Positions 1,697 through 51,297 of a stretch of 64,000 nt of DNA are shown in pieces. The stretch is taken from contig NW_003314275.1 in NCBI RefSeq assembly GCF_000143415.4, forward strand, positions 1,617,955 to 1,681,954. The letters are read 5' to 3'. Every line of letters starts with the position of its first letter. Position 1 is the first letter of the stretch. Below the pieces are notes generated by a model that had not been told where the DNA came from, searched no databases, and was given only the letters and a program-made list of their open reading frames with translations. This DNA comes from Selaginella moellendorffii (taxonomy: Eukaryota > Plantae > Lycopodiophyta). The position numbers and the translations under genes were made by a program.

Positions 1697-1768
1697 GGAG
1701 GTATGGCTCAGCGGTAGAGCAATCGGCTGCAGTTCGATAGGTCACTAGTTCGATCCTGCTTGCCTCCT
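1697..1768 (+). tRNA. tRNA-Cys (GCA), slightly imperfect T-stem
   Basis: Cloverleaf: acceptor GGAGGTA/TGCCTCC, D-arm GCTC/GAGC, anticodon stem ATCGG/TCGAT with loop CTGCAGT, T-loop TTCGATC. Confidence 0.85.
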
Positions 1769-1951
1769 CTTCCAGTTTGAACTTCCCAAGATTGGCGAGG
1801 TTGGTGGTATTAGCTACAATTTGACAAATCATTTTTTGAAACTCAGCTCTGAATCCATTTGTGTTTCATGCTCTAGAAAGACCCTTCAAGGACCATGTAG
1901 ATAGATCTTCTTCACAAGAAAAGTAAATGGTTGAACACCTTTGCTGTGATC

Positions 1952-32457: not shown

Positions 32458-32528
32458 GCGCAGCTGGTGTAGTGGTATCATAGTACCCTCCCACGGTACT
32501 GACCGGGGTTCGATTCCCCGGCTGCGCA
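32458..32528 (+). tRNA. tRNA-Gly (CCC)
   Basis: Acceptor GCGCAGC/GCTGCGC, anticodon stem GTACC/GGTAC with loop CTCCCAC, T-arm CGGGG-TTCGATT-CCCCG, followed by an oligo-T Pol III terminator. Confidence 0.97.
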
Positions 32529-46743: not shown

Positions 46744-47559
46744 ATGGGCAGAGACCGTGGCAAAAATTGCGCCAAGTCTCAAAGGAAGGAGATTGAGCAT
46801 GCACTTACTGAGACGAAGTTGCAAAAGCAACGACGAGATGAGGAATTATCGAAAATCGCTCATATCATTCTTGTTGTTCTAAGGTAATGACGACGCAAAT
46901 TTGATCAGAGGGCCTCTTTTCATAATGTTCCTTCTTGTAGAGACTATGAGCGTCCTAGACAGTTTGAGTATTCGAAACAAGCTTATGCCTTGAAAGCAAT
47001 ATGGAATTATCTTTCCGATGATTGTGAGATCAGCCAGGAAATACAGGACGGTTTGTTCCTCCTATTCCAGAAGCTGCGTTTCCCCGAAGGCCAACAGAAG
47101 ATCGACATGGAATTGGATAAGAAATCTCTGAAAGTAGCAACATCTGAGGCTTCACCAAAGGTGATGCCATTTTCTTGGGACCAAAGCTCACATTATTATG
47201 CAGGTCTTCTGTAACATCCTTATGGATGGGTGGAGCTTATTCAGGCAAAAATTCGAGCACAAGCCTCTAGTGGTCTACCAAGCTGGAAAAAAGGTCCTGA
47301 ACTCATGGACTAATCTAGAATTCACCAAGGGAATCCAGGCTATGAAACAGGATCTTCTGTGGAAGGTGTATTTGAGTATATGGTATCTACGTGTCATGTA
47401 TGATTTAATCATTTATTTACTTGCAGAGAATTGTAGAACACGTAGAAAGCTCACGAGCAGCTGCTTCAAACAATGATCCAGGGGCTAATCAGGTTTGATG
47501 TGTCTTCCTTTTGATGATTAGAGTCTTAGATGTTGTATTTCAGGGAGAAGAAAGCTTAA
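46744..47559 (+). CDS. Hypothetical multi-exon protein divergent from the MAN1-like gene
   Basis: ATG at 46744, in-frame GT-AG splicing (46883-46940 and later introns), open exons up to ~47.5 kb. No recognisable motif; 3' end uncertain. Confidence 0.45.
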
Positions 47560-47772
47560 CATCTTAATGACAGTCACTGGGCTGGTCTATGACAGGTAGA
47601 AAGTTGATAGCTTTTGTAATTTCATCTTCCTAACACAAGATAACAATGTCTCACAGTATAGATTGGAGGTAACCATCAGTAGCAAATTATCTTTGCTCAC
47701 AAACAATATTTACTTAGTATTTTAGTTTATAGATTATAAACAGCTAATGATCTTAAACATGCAAACATTTAA

Positions 47773-49370
47773 TCAAGAACATTCCTCCTCACAGATTCTT
47801 TCACGCTCGATCATATTGCATGATGGCTTTAGAATTACGTGACGCATGAGCGGACGATTAGTGAGTGATAAGTAGGGTAGGTCCTGTAAGTCAACAGTTA
47901 ATTTATCGACTACAAGGCGCACACAAGCCTCACCTTGTCCGAGATGCTCATGGAAGCCATTTTATGACTTGCAAGCATTTCTTTCACCAAACATACGAGC
48001 CGTTCTTTTACTGCACCTGTATACATTTTCCCACCGCCATACTCCTGCAACCAAATTGGTTACTTGTATGTGGCGATCAAACATGGAAGCTCTTACCCCT
48101 TTGATATTTGCCCACTCGTTATCGCTCTCCAGGAAGTAACTCAGATACTTGTAAGGAACATCAATCTGGAACAGAAAAGCTTGCAGCTGAGTCCAAAAGT
48201 TCAATCACAATCACCTCCAAATTGGCCCCATGTTTCTCATGCTCCTCTTTCGTGCTCCCTCCACCACTAAAGGCATGCTTGCGTATCTATGAGGAAGGAT
48301 AGACAACTATCAACCTTGACAGGAGCAAGAGAAATACCTTCATTTCAATCATAGGTGGATCGTCCGACAGAAACAACAATTGGCAGTTGCTGTTGAAAGT
48401 TTGCGCATTGCCTAGTTCGCCCTGCCACACTACTTAAATGAGAACAGATTGCTAAACTTTTTGTTTCACCTGTAGCATCGGGAGAGGTTTGAGTTGGACA
48501 ACCGCCGGCTCTGGTAAATTAGCACGTTCAAAAGCAGCTTTGGGAAATCTATCCTGCAGAATTCAGGTTTTCAATCAAGGCACTCGAACGTCCGTAGCTT
48601 ACTACCTGGCCAATTCTAAGACACTTCGTAAATGTCTCGCCGAGGAGAGTCTGGGGAAGGCGACAGAAAACAGCCTGCCGGAAACTTCCGTCAAGAGCGA
48701 AAAAGAATCACGAAAGAGAGAACCTCAACAAGTTCTTGCTGAAGAGCTGCCACGTCCGTCTTCGCTCCACGTACAGCCTGAATATTTTTTCCATACAACG
48801 CTTAGAAGTCCCCTTTCAAAGCCAGTATACCTCATTTATCAGCATGCACTTTGAAACATCGACAACACTCCTGTAGATTCTGAGAGGGTAAAGGTATGAG
48901 AGTGTGAAGGTCAGCTGACAAAAGCACTGTTTTTACCTGCTTGAAATGGAAGGAGGAGTGAGAATAAAAGTCCGCGACTTGTCCAAGCCGCAGGCCAAAA
49001 CACTCCTGGCCTGTGCATCAAAACACGCCTTTCTCTTGGCTGGATCGATACTAAGCTTTGAATCCGTGCAGGAAAGGATAATGACAACAGGTGCCGCAGT
49101 TGCGGTTTGCACATCCCTAGGCAAGAAAAACATAAAACAGTTTGCAAGAAATCCTGGGTTGTGCTTACTTTACAAACTGAAGAGAAGCCAAATGACGCAG
49201 ATCTAATTGTTCCGACACATCAAAGGTTCCCGCAAACAGATAAAATCTCTCCTTTCCTTCCAAGAGCTCCGCCAATACACTGCAACACAAGGATGAGCGC
49301 CGCAACACAGACGGCTACATACAGACCTGCTGTTTTCCAGGAGACCACGAGTGAGATACCGTGCCGCCAT
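47773..49370 (-). CDS. Divergent cytosolic-type tryptophanyl-tRNA synthetase paralog (likely pseudoenzyme), 10 exons
   Basis: Hand-spliced uninterrupted ORF: FYLFAGTFDVSEQLDLRHL, SVLACGLDKSRTFI, IRKHAFSGGGSTKEEHEKHGANLEIDVPYKYLSYFLE, EYGGGKMYTGAVKERL. Confidence 0.85.
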
Positions 49371-49541
49371 GCCTCAAAAACCCTACTAAAGCCCTTAAAT
49401 AAATGTTTGCATGCCCGGTTTCCTTTAAAGGCTTTAAGGGATTCTTGATGGGGAATTATTCCATGGAATGGCATCTAAAGTGGGACTTTTTTTTATTTTG
49501 GTTCAGTGAATATATCTAAAATCGTGGACGCCACGACCTCC

Positions 49542-51297
49542 ATGAATGGAGCTTCAAGGATACTTGGTTCTATTGCGCCTCTAGCAGCGGCGCCATTCAG
49601 CTCCTCGCGCCAACAAGGTACTACACATTTCCAAAGATCCCACACCATGGAGCTGCATGAGGAGCGCGAGCTCCATCGCAATCTCCTCAGCATGCCACAC
49701 AGGCCAGCATTCACAGCGTCGTACTGCTTCTTGGAGCCGATCTGTGCCACTCTTCCCTCAAATCCAGATCCCTCGCTCGCAAGCCAGGACTTGGCGCCAG
49801 TGTGCAAAGAGGGGAGGCTCTTATCTTCATGGGATATGACATTCTTGTGGCTGGGCTTGGTCGTGGGAGTTCCAAATTACTATCTCGCTGGAAGCTTGGT
49901 GGAGCTCGGGATGGCATGGTGGCAAGGAATTGGCACCGTCTTGCTTGCGAATGTGATCACGTACTGCATTCTCGTCTTAGCTGCGCATCCAGGGACCAAG
50001 TATGGGATTTCCTTCCCGGTTTTGTTGCGAGCTTCTTTCGGAGTGTTTGGAGCCAACGTCCCGGCTTTGCTGCGAGGCTTTGTGGCTTGCGGGTGGTACG
50101 GGATTGAGACTTGGATAGGTGGTGAGGCGATTTTCAGGATTGTGGACGTGATGTTGGGGAAGAACAGGTTCTCCAACTTGGCCGAGAGCTTGCCTTTGCT
50201 TGGGACCTCTGTGCCCGAGCTTGGGTGTTTTTTCCTGTTTTGGCTGCTGCAGCTGTGGATTGTGTGGAATGGGATCGAGAGCATTAAGAAGCTGGAGAAG
50301 TATAGCGCTCCGGTGCTTATCGTGCTCACGGTGGCCTTGCTTGTTTGGGCCGTCGTCTCTGCTGGGGGATTTGGAGCAATGCTTGCTGCTTCTTCGGCAT
50401 TTGGACGTGGTGGTCGCAAGGAAGGCAAGTTCTGGCAAGTTTTCTTGCCTTCGCTTACAGCAAACATTGGAACGTGGTCGACTTTGAGCTTGAATATCCC
50501 AGGTATGGTTCCACCTTTCTTTTCTTTCTCCTCGCATGGTTGCATCTCATTTCTTTTTTCTTCTTGCAGATTTTAGCCGGTACACTTATTCGCAGGCTGA
50601 TCAAATCCTTGGCCAGGCAAGCCTGCCTCTTTTCATGGCCGCCTTCTCTTTCGTCGGCCTGGCAGTGACATCGGCTTCGGAAGTCATATTCGGACACGCC
50701 ATATCCAACCCCATCGAGCTCCTTTCACGGATACGAGGTGGCTTTCTCGTTGCTGTGGTTTCACTCATTGGAGTCACCCTGGCCACTCTCACCACCAACA
50801 TCGCAGCCAACGTCGTGGCACCGGCAAACGCACTCGTCAACCTTGATCCAAAGCGATTCACCTATAGAAGCAGCGGACTCGTTGTGGCAGTCATAAGCGT
50901 GTGCTTCCTTCCGTGGAAGCTCCTCCAGACCAGCGAAAGTTTCATATACGCTTGGCTAGTCGGCTACTCGGCACTTCTCGGCCCAATCGGAGGTATACTT
51001 CTTGCTGATTACTACATTCTCAGGCAACGAAAGTTGGATATTGACTCCCTCTATTCCTCGAGCAACACAGGAAAATACTGGTACTCCAAAGGTGTGAATC
51101 CCGCGGCAATGGTTGCTCTTACGGCTGGAATTCTACCCTGCATTCCAGGCTTCCTGAGCACCGTCGGCCTACTGAAGCTCAAGATTCCAAGGCTTTTGCT
51201 AGCTCTGTATGATGGTGCATGGTTTGTGGGGTTCTTCGTGGCTGGACTCGTATACTTGACGCTTTCGTGCTTTCCCCGAGTGGAGAGAGCCTTGTAA
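49542..51297 (+). CDS. NCS1: Nucleobase:cation symporter-1 (purine/uracil permease), 2 exons; start 49542 or 49647
   Basis: [51 protein letters not shown]|[19 protein letters not shown]. Confidence 0.95.

What the first reader, a model, noticed from the sequence alone, without database searches (positions are those of the whole stretch)
47773..49370. Intact but catalytically eroded TrpRS paralog: candidate tRNA-binding pseudo-synthetase
Seen: ten short exons with canonical GT-AG boundaries join into one stop-free ORF. The ORF track misses it because the exons are tiny. It is collinear with eukaryotic cytosolic TrpRS. The class-I motifs are replaced: GRGPS...HLGH (HIGH) reads GTFDV...DLRH, the Trp-pocket AIDQ reads RIGQ, and KMSAS reads NAQTF. 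The C-terminal anticodon-binding region (HAFSGG, GANLE.D.P.KYL.YFLE, EYG.GKM.TG.VK.RL) is well conserved. The N-terminal extension is missing. Established: HIGH and KMSKS motifs are needed for aminoacyl-adenylate formation, and aaRS paralogs that lost catalysis are known in regulatory roles (HisZ, the GCN2 HisRS-like domain). Inference: an intact frame with uneven conservation suggests selection for a non-catalytic job, such as a tRNA-Trp binder/sensor or a heterodimer partner of the normally homodimeric TrpRS.
Basis: partly seen in the sequence, partly recalled or inferred. Interest (0 to 1): 0.88.

Follow-up and report, generated by a model that had tools for sequence, protein, structure and literature searches.

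The report
Expressed dead TrpRS copy in spikemoss
The spikemoss Selaginella moellendorffii transcribes, correctly splices and keeps under selection an extra copy of its tryptophan-tRNA charging enzyme; the copy's catalytic site is destroyed but the residues that grip the tRNA anticodon are intact, so it is a pseudo-enzyme and not a decaying pseudogene, and what it does remains untested.

Summary
The minus strand from 49370 to 47773 carries a 345-aa open frame. It has 12 exons, not ten, and 11 GT-AG introns of 47-57 nt. RNA-seq supports every junction, with strand-consistent reads from two alleles. The organism is Selaginella moellendorffii. The public model for this window (SELMODRAFT_411225, 298 aa) is wrong in two places.

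The protein hits only eukaryotic TrpRS among solved structures (E 5e-35) and has the TrpRS fold. Ten of its 11 introns share position and phase with an angiosperm cytosolic TrpRS gene.

The HIGH, GRGPSS, AIDQ and KMSAS motifs, the Trp-pocket residues (for example Q194 to I) and the A73-reading N-terminal helix are all lost. Every canonically invariant column of the helical anticodon domain is kept (12/12, against 19/57 in the catalytic part).

It is not a pseudogene:
- Neutral simulation gave 0 of 300 stop-free frames.
- All exon length changes are multiples of 3.
- Between-haplotype dN/dS is 0.28 (P 0.003).
- All haplotype indels lie in introns.

tRNA-Trp binding and heterodimerisation are inferred, not shown. 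The nearest analogues are SLIMP and the trypanosomatid TyrRS pseudo-dimer. The scan reported the same gene before on the other haplotype (s1-334479).

The parts
47720..49404 (-). Transcript extent as seen in RNA contigs: 5' UTR about 34 nt, 3' UTR about 50 nt
   Evidence: table 8. The X5 contig reaches 49404. The X1 read-through adapter starts at 49391. Contigs end at 47720-47739.
49327..49370 (-). Exon 1 (ATG at 49370; residues 1-15). It aligns to human TrpRS from about residue 127, so helix alpha1' (A73 recognition) is absent
   Evidence: junction 49279/49327; PMC1538984
49169..49279 (-). Exon 2. GRGPSS has become GTFDVS (49230-49213) and HxGH has become DLRH (49203-49192)
48937..49116 (-). 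Exon 3: beta2 and the CP1 region. Trp-binding Q194 has become I65 (within 49088-49071). No real relative in 1.84 billion representative proteins apart from its own cluster
48831..48879 (-). Exon 4
48724..48777 (-). Exon 5 (18 aa). The public 298-aa model omits it; RNA junctions on both sides confirm it
   Evidence: junctions 48776/48830 and 48673/48723
48606..48674 (-). Exon 6. AIDQ has become RIGQ (48617-48606) and the preceding IPC is deleted
48470..48553 (-). Exon 7. PYF is deleted (F317 lost); R318 and R326 are kept
48338..48421 (-). Exon 8. KMSAS has become NAQTF (48409-48395)
48215..48286 (-). Exon 9: the anticodon-wrapping loop HAFSGGGSTKEEH (48277-48239). It keeps 9/9 conserved columns, and on its own it hits only TrpRS chains in the PDB
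48097..48165 (-). Exon 10: helical domain, same length (69 nt) as the plant canonical exon
47934..48044 (-). Exon 11: helix alpha14 with Y280-T-G-A-V-K285 (48026-48006). T427, G428 and K431 equivalents are kept; L426 has become Y. Same length (111 nt) as the canonical exon
47773..47883 (-). Exon 12: a divergent, extended tail ending in an acidic, Cys-rich stretch, modelled with low confidence. The public 298-aa model for this window misses the intron before it
   Evidence: (junction 47882/47933)

Best explanation
This is a DNA-level duplicate of the plant cytosolic tryptophanyl-tRNA synthetase gene that has become a pseudo-synthetase.

Shown here:
- It is transcribed from the minus strand, all 11 introns are removed, and two alleles are expressed.
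- It keeps the TrpRS fold.
- It has lost the residues needed to bind ATP, to bind tryptophan and to read the discriminator base A73.
- It keeps all invariant residues of the helical anticodon-binding domain, including the equivalent of the essential Lys431.
- Its reading frame and protein sequence are under purifying selection in both the eroded and the conserved halves.

Inferred: the protein still grips the CCA anticodon loop of tRNA-Trp. TrpRS binds each tRNA across its two subunits, with the anticodon on one and the acceptor end in the active site of the other. The paralog therefore probably works in a dimer. The most plausible partner is the canonical TrpRS, giving an asymmetric enzyme with one live active site fed by the paralog's anticodon domain, or a modulator of that enzyme.
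For: - Gene model and splice sites.
- All 11 junctions, strand, both alleles, and depth similar to the neighbouring NCS1 transporter.
- TrpRS-only PDB hits, E 5e-35, with the N part at 37 bits and the C part at 85 bits. Exon 9 alone hits only TrpRS.
- Fold: AF2 pLDDT 82, pTM 0.81, best match 2ake_A at TM 0.76. The alignment-free ESM model has pTM 0.79.
- Ten of 11 introns share position and phase with the Thalictrum canonical gene, and the three helical-domain exons have identical lengths of 72, 69 and 111 nt.
- Residue table: Y159F, G163F, Q194I, E199D, H170D, G172R, D312G, K349N, F317 deleted. F377, S378, G380, H387, T427, G428 and K431 are kept. Q194L abolishes human TrpRS activity and K431 is essential (PMC1538984).
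- Invariant columns kept 19/57 against 12/12, P 1.6e-5.
- Selection: dN/dS 0.28 with 12 nonsynonymous and 12 synonymous changes, P 0.003. The catalytic half alone gives 0.24, P 0.006. All 4 indels are intronic, P 0.015. The control neighbour gene gives 0.20.
- Neutral simulation to 31% identity: a mean of 10.8 stops, and 0 of 300 runs stop-free.
- Cross-subunit tRNA binding: PMC1538984.
Against: - No binding, dimerisation or protein-level evidence exists.
- L426, which stacks on C34, is Tyr here.
- The helical domain also sits on a long branch.
- dN/dS for the helical half alone is not significant (4 nonsynonymous against 3 synonymous changes, P 0.16).
- Conservation of the CP1 dimer interface could not be assessed, and only 11 of 35 conserved columns are kept in exon 3.
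- No ortholog was found outside S. moellendorffii, so long-term conservation rests on ORF arguments and on within-species data.
- The canonical Selaginella TrpRS could not be fetched for comparison.
Confidence: 0.6

Rival explanations
1. It is a neofunctionalised protein-only module. The TrpRS fold is kept as a scaffold or as a regulator of canonical TrpRS or another partner, on the prozyme model. The anticodon-pocket residues are retained for structural reasons and the protein does not bind tRNA.
For: The eroded catalytic half is itself under purifying selection (omega 0.24, P 0.006), so it does something. A new 36-aa tail has been added. L426 has become Y in the C34 pocket. Dead paralogs that activate their live partners are known (PMC5201418, PMC3663545, listed).
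Against: The residues kept are exactly the base-contacting ones (F377, S378, G380, H387, T427, G428, K431), and 12/12 invariant helical-domain columns survive while 2/3 of the catalytic ones are lost. A pure scaffold would not need them.
Confidence: 0.22
2. It acts on tRNA-Trp as a free homodimer or monomer, as a carrier, chaperone or sequestering factor. An example would be escorting cytosolic tRNA-Trp towards organelles, independent of canonical TrpRS.
For: The anticodon residues are intact. S. moellendorffii mtDNA encodes no tRNA at all, so every mitochondrial tRNA must be imported (PMC5654404). The paralog appears confined to this lineage.
Against: No targeting extension is visible. The first residues are homologous to the TrpRS core and are modelled as part of the fold (pLDDT 84). 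Nothing links this gene to import. The argument is circumstantial.
Confidence: 0.1
3. It is a transcribed, unprocessed pseudogene drifting neutrally that happens still to be open.
For: The catalytic motifs are destroyed. Pfam does not recognise the protein. No orthologs were found. Expression is low to moderate.
Against: In a neutral simulation, 0 of 300 runs stayed stop-free at this divergence, with a mean of 10.8 stops. Six exons changed length, always by multiples of 3. All 11 splice sites are intact and used in both alleles. dN/dS is 0.28, P 0.003, like the neighbouring functional gene at 0.20. All four haplotype indels are intronic.
Confidence: 0.04
4. It is a still-active, highly divergent TrpRS with unconventional motifs.
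For: The overall fold is retained. Q284, Q313, H173 and G161 are kept.
Against: Q194 is Ile here, and Q194L abolishes activity in the human enzyme (PMC1538984). The first His and the Gly of HxGH, all five KMSAS residues, D312, G163 and E199 are replaced, and F317 is deleted. The A73-reading helix is absent. The NCBIfam trpS score is 67.7 bits against a cut-off of 176.75.
Confidence: 0.02

Closest known systems
SLIMP / SerRS2-alpha heterodimeric mitochondrial seryl-tRNA synthetase of animals (PMC10570016)
   Same: It is an aaRS paralog whose active site is ablated while its tRNA-recognition domain is retained and needed. The parent enzyme is a dimer that binds tRNA across its subunits. The dead subunit supplies tRNA recognition to the live one.
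   Different: It is class II SerRS, not class Ic TrpRS. It is mitochondrial and widespread in animals. Its partner has lost its own tRNA-binding domain. Here the heterodimer, the localisation and the state of the canonical partner are all unknown, and the gene is seen only in Selaginella.
Trypanosomatid double-length TyrRS pseudo-dimer (Larson et al. 2011, via PMC8319005 and PMC9978631)
   Same: It belongs to the same class Ic subfamily (TyrRS/TrpRS). [quoted passage not shown]
   Different: There the two copies are fused in one polypeptide and the catalytic copy has a damaged anticodon domain. Here the dead copy is a separate gene and its partnership with canonical TrpRS is only inferred.
Canonical eukaryotic cytosolic TrpRS (human WARS1; plant cytosolic TrpRS)
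   Same: The fold (TM 0.76 to 2ake_A), the domain order, 10 shared intron positions and phases with the plant gene, and the anticodon-contact residues.
   Different: It lacks HIGH, KMSAS, AIDQ, the Trp-pocket residues and the N-terminal fragment with helix alpha1'. It has deletions in the catalytic core and a new C-terminal tail. It falls below the Pfam and NCBIfam thresholds.
HisZ and the GCN2 HisRS-like domain
   Same: They are aaRS-derived, non-aminoacylating, and used for regulation or for sensing of tRNA or other ligands.
   Different: They derive from class II HisRS. They are ancient and widespread with established partners (HisG; the GCN2 kinase domain). The comparison is by analogy only.

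Membership tests
Tryptophan--tRNA ligase (functional TrpRS, EC 6.1.1.2) | HIGH-type signature (HxGH) for ATP binding | tested here: not met
   It reads DLRH. The first His is Asp and the invariant Gly is Arg, while 18/18 canonical sequences keep H and G.
Tryptophan--tRNA ligase (functional TrpRS, EC 6.1.1.2) | KMSKS-type loop (KMSAS in eukaryotes) | tested here: not met
   It reads NAQTF, with all five positions changed.
Tryptophan--tRNA ligase (functional TrpRS, EC 6.1.1.2) | Trp-pocket residues (Y159, G163, Q194, E199, F317) and AIDQ Asp312 | tested here: not met
   Y159F, G163F, Q194I, E199D, F317 deleted and D312G. Q194L abolishes activity in the human enzyme (PMC1538984).
Tryptophan--tRNA ligase (functional TrpRS, EC 6.1.1.2) | Curated profile thresholds (NCBIfam trpS TIGR00233; Pfam PF00579) | tested here: not met
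   TIGR00233 scores 67.7 bits against a cut-off of 176.75, and only residues 177-311 match. Pfam gives no hit. The plant control P0043 passes both.
Tryptophan--tRNA ligase (functional TrpRS, EC 6.1.1.2) | Aminoacylation / ATP-PPi exchange activity | not testable with these tools
   This needs a biochemical assay.
TrpRS homologous superfamily (descent from eukaryotic cytosolic TrpRS) | Significant full-length sequence and fold similarity to TrpRS only | tested here: met
   All 19 PDB sequence hits are TrpRS, with a best E of 4.8e-35. The Foldseek top 45 are TrpRS, TM 0.76.
TrpRS homologous superfamily (descent from eukaryotic cytosolic TrpRS) | Shared gene structure with plant cytosolic TrpRS | tested here: met
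   Ten of 11 introns have the same position and phase as the Thalictrum gene.
aaRS-derived pseudo-synthetase with retained tRNA-recognition domain (SLIMP-like / TyrRS pseudo-dimer-like) | Active site ablated while the tRNA-recognition residues are conserved | tested here: met
   Invariant columns are kept 19/57 against 12/12. Anticodon contacts F377, S378, G380, H387, T427, G428 and K431 are kept.
aaRS-derived pseudo-synthetase with retained tRNA-recognition domain (SLIMP-like / TyrRS pseudo-dimer-like) | Expressed and under purifying selection | tested here: met
   RNA junctions; dN/dS 0.28, P 0.003; intron-only indels; neutral simulation 0/300.
aaRS-derived pseudo-synthetase with retained tRNA-recognition domain (SLIMP-like / TyrRS pseudo-dimer-like) | Physical tRNA binding and heterodimer formation with the catalytic partner | not testable with these tools
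   No complex prediction or assay was available, and the canonical Selaginella TrpRS could not be retrieved.

The most novel reading that the evidence does not exclude
The paralog is a dedicated non-charging tRNA-Trp handler that arose in a lineage whose mitochondria encode no tRNAs at all (PMC5654404). It would be either a carrier or chaperone that routes cytosolic tRNA-Trp to organelles, or the obligate anticodon-reading subunit of a heterodimeric TrpRS. In the second case it would be the first split class I synthetase with this division of labour in plants.
Probability: 0.12. Interest if true: 0.85.

Novelty: new member of a known kind. Interest (0 to 1): 0.58.

Why it matters
Catalytically dead aaRS paralogs that keep their tRNA-recognition module are rare and informative. 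SLIMP and the trypanosomatid TyrRS pseudo-dimer show how a homodimeric synthetase can split its labour between subunits.

A 2022 review of aaRS duplications lists only active TrpRS duplicates and no TrpRS-like protein with a non-canonical role (PMC9437257). No paper in the searched library links Selaginella with TrpRS.

This gene would be a TrpRS-derived, plant example. It already has evidence of expression and selection, and it gives direct predictions that can be tested by EMSA, pull-down and activity assays.

The work also corrects a public gene model: SELMODRAFT_411225 lacks one exon and one intron.

Tried and rejected
- Pfam on single exons found nothing. Pfam on the full protein also found nothing.
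- PDB sequence searches with exon 3 and exon 11 alone gave only chance hits. Exon 9 alone did hit TrpRS.
It returned only the gene's own cluster plus four repetitive proteins. Those scores come from summed weak repeat matches and are spurious.
- Word-based homolog searches with the whole protein and with its helical part found only the two Selaginella alleles and a few canonical TrpRS.
- The third protein search, with a canonical profile, returned 120 TrpRS but no Selaginella canonical enzyme. The duplication could therefore not be dated and the partner's anticodon domain could not be inspected.
- The full-length tree is uninformative. The paralog sits on a branch of about 7 changes per site at an unresolved node. 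The helical-domain tree places it with Viridiplantae at 78/98 support, which is not decisive.
- Three private variants of a third allele in run X9 (2 nonsynonymous, 1 synonymous) add too little to change the dN/dS estimate.
- The spliced 345-aa product of this window has no reference. The 97%-identical other-haplotype protein P0006 was used for folding and family scans instead.
- The look-up of sequencing runs was busy twice before it answered.

Full report
**What is there.** The minus strand between 49370 and 47773 was read in three frames. A model was assembled from GT/AG sites that keeps one frame open. It has 12 exons:
- 49370-49327
- 49279-49169
- 49116-48937
- 48879-48831
- 48777-48724
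- 48674-48606
- 48553-48470
- 48421-48338
- 48286-48215
- 48165-48097
- 48044-47934
- 47883-47773

The 11 introns are 47-57 nt long and all are GT-AG. The CDS is 1038 nt and encodes 345 aa. Its count of ten exons is low by two.

**Organism and public models.** An exhaustive search with exon 3 returned a 298-aa protein identical over that exon. The word-based search named it SELMODRAFT_411225 of Selaginella moellendorffii. It also found a 345-aa sister, SELMODRAFT_418391 (P0006). P0006 is encoded on scaffold GL377602.1. That locus (L001) is collinear with this window over 13.6 kb at 96.6-97.9% identity and has the same neighbours: a WWE protein, a kinase, an NCS1 transporter and others. It is therefore the other haplotype. 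P0006 has exactly my 12-exon structure. The 298-aa model of this window omits exon 5 and reads through the last intron.

**Expression and splicing.** Nineteen RNA runs hold about a third of the sampled 31-mers, roughly the share that lies wholly inside exons. I laid three contig sets from different studies and one run of raw reads on 47200-50200.
- All 11 junctions appear at the predicted coordinates. Raw reads give 4-9 per junction from several start sites, and most are also in the contigs.
- This includes both junctions of exon 5 and the last intron. The 345-aa model is therefore right and the 298-aa model is wrong.
- First mates lie on the plus strand over this gene and on the minus strand over the oppositely oriented neighbour, as expected for a minus-strand mRNA in a stranded library.
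- Variant letters at the haplotype-differing sites show that two alleles are expressed.
- Depth is similar to the neighbouring transporter in X21 and about ten times higher in X1.
- Contigs run from about 49404 to about 47720. No upstream exon or ATG exists, so the N-terminal truncation is real.

**Descent from TrpRS.** The protein hits 19 distinct PDB sequences, all of them eukaryotic or archaeal-type TrpRS. The best E-value is 4.8e-35. The match splits into an N-terminal stretch of 37 bits and a C-terminal stretch of 85 bits. Exon 9 alone (24 aa) hits only TrpRS.

An AlphaFold2 model of P0006 has mean pLDDT 82 and pTM 0.81, with pLDDT 94-98 over the helical domain. Its best structural match is human TrpRS in complex with tRNA (2ake_A, TM 0.76), followed by about 45 TrpRS chains. 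The ESM Atlas holds an alignment-free model with pTM 0.79 that also matches TrpRS clusters.

I mapped the exons of a canonical angiosperm gene (Thalictrum, L002). Its ten introns in the homologous region lie at the same positions and phases as ten of the paralog's eleven. The three helical-domain exons have identical lengths of 72, 69 and 111 nt. Every exon-length difference in the catalytic part is a multiple of three: -6, -3, -12, -18, -9 and +3. The gene is therefore a DNA-level duplicate of a plant-type cytosolic TrpRS gene. It is neither a retrocopy nor a transfer.

Trees cannot date the duplication. The paralog sits on a very long branch. With the helical domain alone it joins Viridiplantae at 78/98 support, and a clade with land plants is not rejected.

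**Catalytic erosion against anticodon-domain conservation.** I aligned the paralog with 18 canonical eukaryotic TrpRS sequences.

| Measure | Catalytic part (residues 1-206) | Helical part (residues 207-309) |
|---|---|---|
| Invariant canonical columns kept | 19 of 57 (5 deleted) | 12 of 12 |
| Columns conserved at 80% or more, kept | 38 of 118 | 26 of 36 |
| Identity, paralog to canonical | 27% | 42% |
| Identity among canonical enzymes | 66% | 54% (minimum 35%) |

Fisher's test gives P 1.6e-5 for the invariant columns and P 3e-5 for the 80% columns.

The residue changes below use human numbering, with functional roles taken from PMC1538984.
- Lost or changed: Y159F, G163F, Q194I, E199D, F317 deleted, H170D and G172R (HxGH), R162T, P164D, S165V, A310R and D312G (AIDQ), and K349N-M350A-S351Q-A352T-S353F.
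- Q194L alone abolishes human TrpRS activity.
- Residue 4 aligns to human residue 130, so helix alpha1' with D99, K102 and R106, which read the discriminator A73, is absent.
- Kept anticodon contacts: F377, S378, G380, H387, T427, G428 and the essential K431.
- R381G, D382S and I384K fall within the variation seen among canonical enzymes.
- Only L426Y is unusual.

NCBIfam's trpS model scores 67.7 bits against a cut-off of 176.75 and matches only residues 177-311. Pfam PF00579 does not match. A plant control passes both.

**Pseudogene or selected gene.**
- I mutated the homologous Thalictrum CDS at random until protein identity fell to 31%. This gave a mean of 10.8 stop codons, and no stop-free outcome in 300 runs.
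- Between the two haplotypes the 1038 exon bases carry 24 substitutions, 12 synonymous and 12 nonsynonymous. The 560 intron bases carry 23 substitutions and all four indel events.
- Nei-Gojobori dN/dS is 0.28 (dS 0.054, dN 0.015). The deficit of nonsynonymous changes has P 0.0028.
- The eroded catalytic half alone gives dN/dS 0.24, P 0.006. The helical half has too few changes to test (4 against 3).
- The chance that all four indels fall in introns is 0.015.
- The first exon of the neighbouring NCS1 transporter, used as a control, gives dN/dS 0.20.

The neutral-pseudogene reading is therefore rejected. The degenerate catalytic domain is itself constrained today.

**Likely mechanism.** The shown parts are these: an expressed, selected TrpRS-fold protein that cannot activate tryptophan and that keeps the anticodon pocket. 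The rest is inference. In human TrpRS each tRNA binds across the dimer, with the anticodon on the helical domain of one subunit and the acceptor end in the active site of the other (PMC1538984). A subunit with a dead site but a live anticodon domain is what an asymmetric dimer needs.

Two precedents have this layout. In the animal mitochondrial SLIMP/SerRS2-alpha heterodimer, the active-site-ablated subunit supplies tRNA recognition (PMC10570016). In the trypanosomatid double-length TyrRS, from the same class Ic subfamily, the copy lacking KMSKS carries the working anticodon site (PMC8319005).

My preferred reading is that the protein binds the tRNA-Trp anticodon within a dimer, probably with canonical TrpRS. 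Alternatives are a tRNA-independent scaffold or regulator, and a free tRNA-Trp carrier. The carrier idea is prompted by the complete absence of tRNA genes from S. moellendorffii mtDNA (PMC5654404). No targeting peptide is visible, however.

**Novelty.** No paper in the library links Selaginella with TrpRS. A review of aaRS duplications lists only active TrpRS duplicates (PMC9437257). No relative of exon 3 exists in 1.84 billion representative proteins beyond the gene's own cluster. The kind of protein, an aaRS-derived pseudo-synthetase, is known; this would be a new TrpRS-derived, plant member. The scan had already reported the same gene on the other haplotype (s1-334479). My tests were made independently on this window and agree with that report.

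**Limits.**
- The canonical Selaginella TrpRS could not be retrieved.
- No orthologs outside the species were found or excluded.
- There is no protein-level, binding or interaction evidence.
- The structure and family scans used the 97%-identical allele P0006, because the spliced product of this window has no reference.

Noticed in passing
window 47773-49370 (-) versus P0001: The public gene model for this window (SELMODRAFT_411225, 298 aa) skips exon 5 (48777-48724) and reads through the last intron to an early stop. RNA-seq supports the 345-aa structure that is annotated on the other haplotype.
   Followed up: yes
window 49371-49506: The TrpRS-like gene and the NCS1-type nucleobase transporter gene (plus strand, from about 49486) are head to head. 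Their transcript ends lie only about 80-100 nt apart, which suggests a shared bidirectional promoter.
   Followed up: partly
L002 5478-5570 and 6243-6335: The Thalictrum thalictroides canonical TrpRS model (P0043) contains the exon that begins just after AIDQ (DPYF...FFPALQ) twice in tandem, which duplicates 31 residues. This is either an assembly or annotation artefact or a real exon duplication.
   Followed up: no
P0013, P0015, P0016: Arabis alpina, Oxalis oulophora and Microthlaspi erraticum entries of 780-900 aa each contain two complete TrpRS units. They are apparently tandem TrpRS genes merged by annotation, so cytosolic TrpRS tandem duplicates recur in angiosperms.
   Followed up: partly
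window 1697-1769 and 32458-32528: The window carries two nuclear tRNA genes, tRNA-Cys(GCA) and tRNA-Gly(CCC). It carries no tRNA-Trp gene.
   Followed up: no
run X9 (organism C) and X7 (organism B): Runs labelled with other organism codes hold this gene at 95% identity or more. X9 carries a mosaic of the two assembly haplotypes plus three private variants (48388, 49056, 49210). It is therefore a third allele, or a mislabelled or very close taxon.
   Followed up: partly
P0002-P0005: Four long repetitive proteins scored E 4e-14 to 1e-4 against exon 3 only because weak matches sum over many tandem repeats. They are not homologs.
   Followed up: yes
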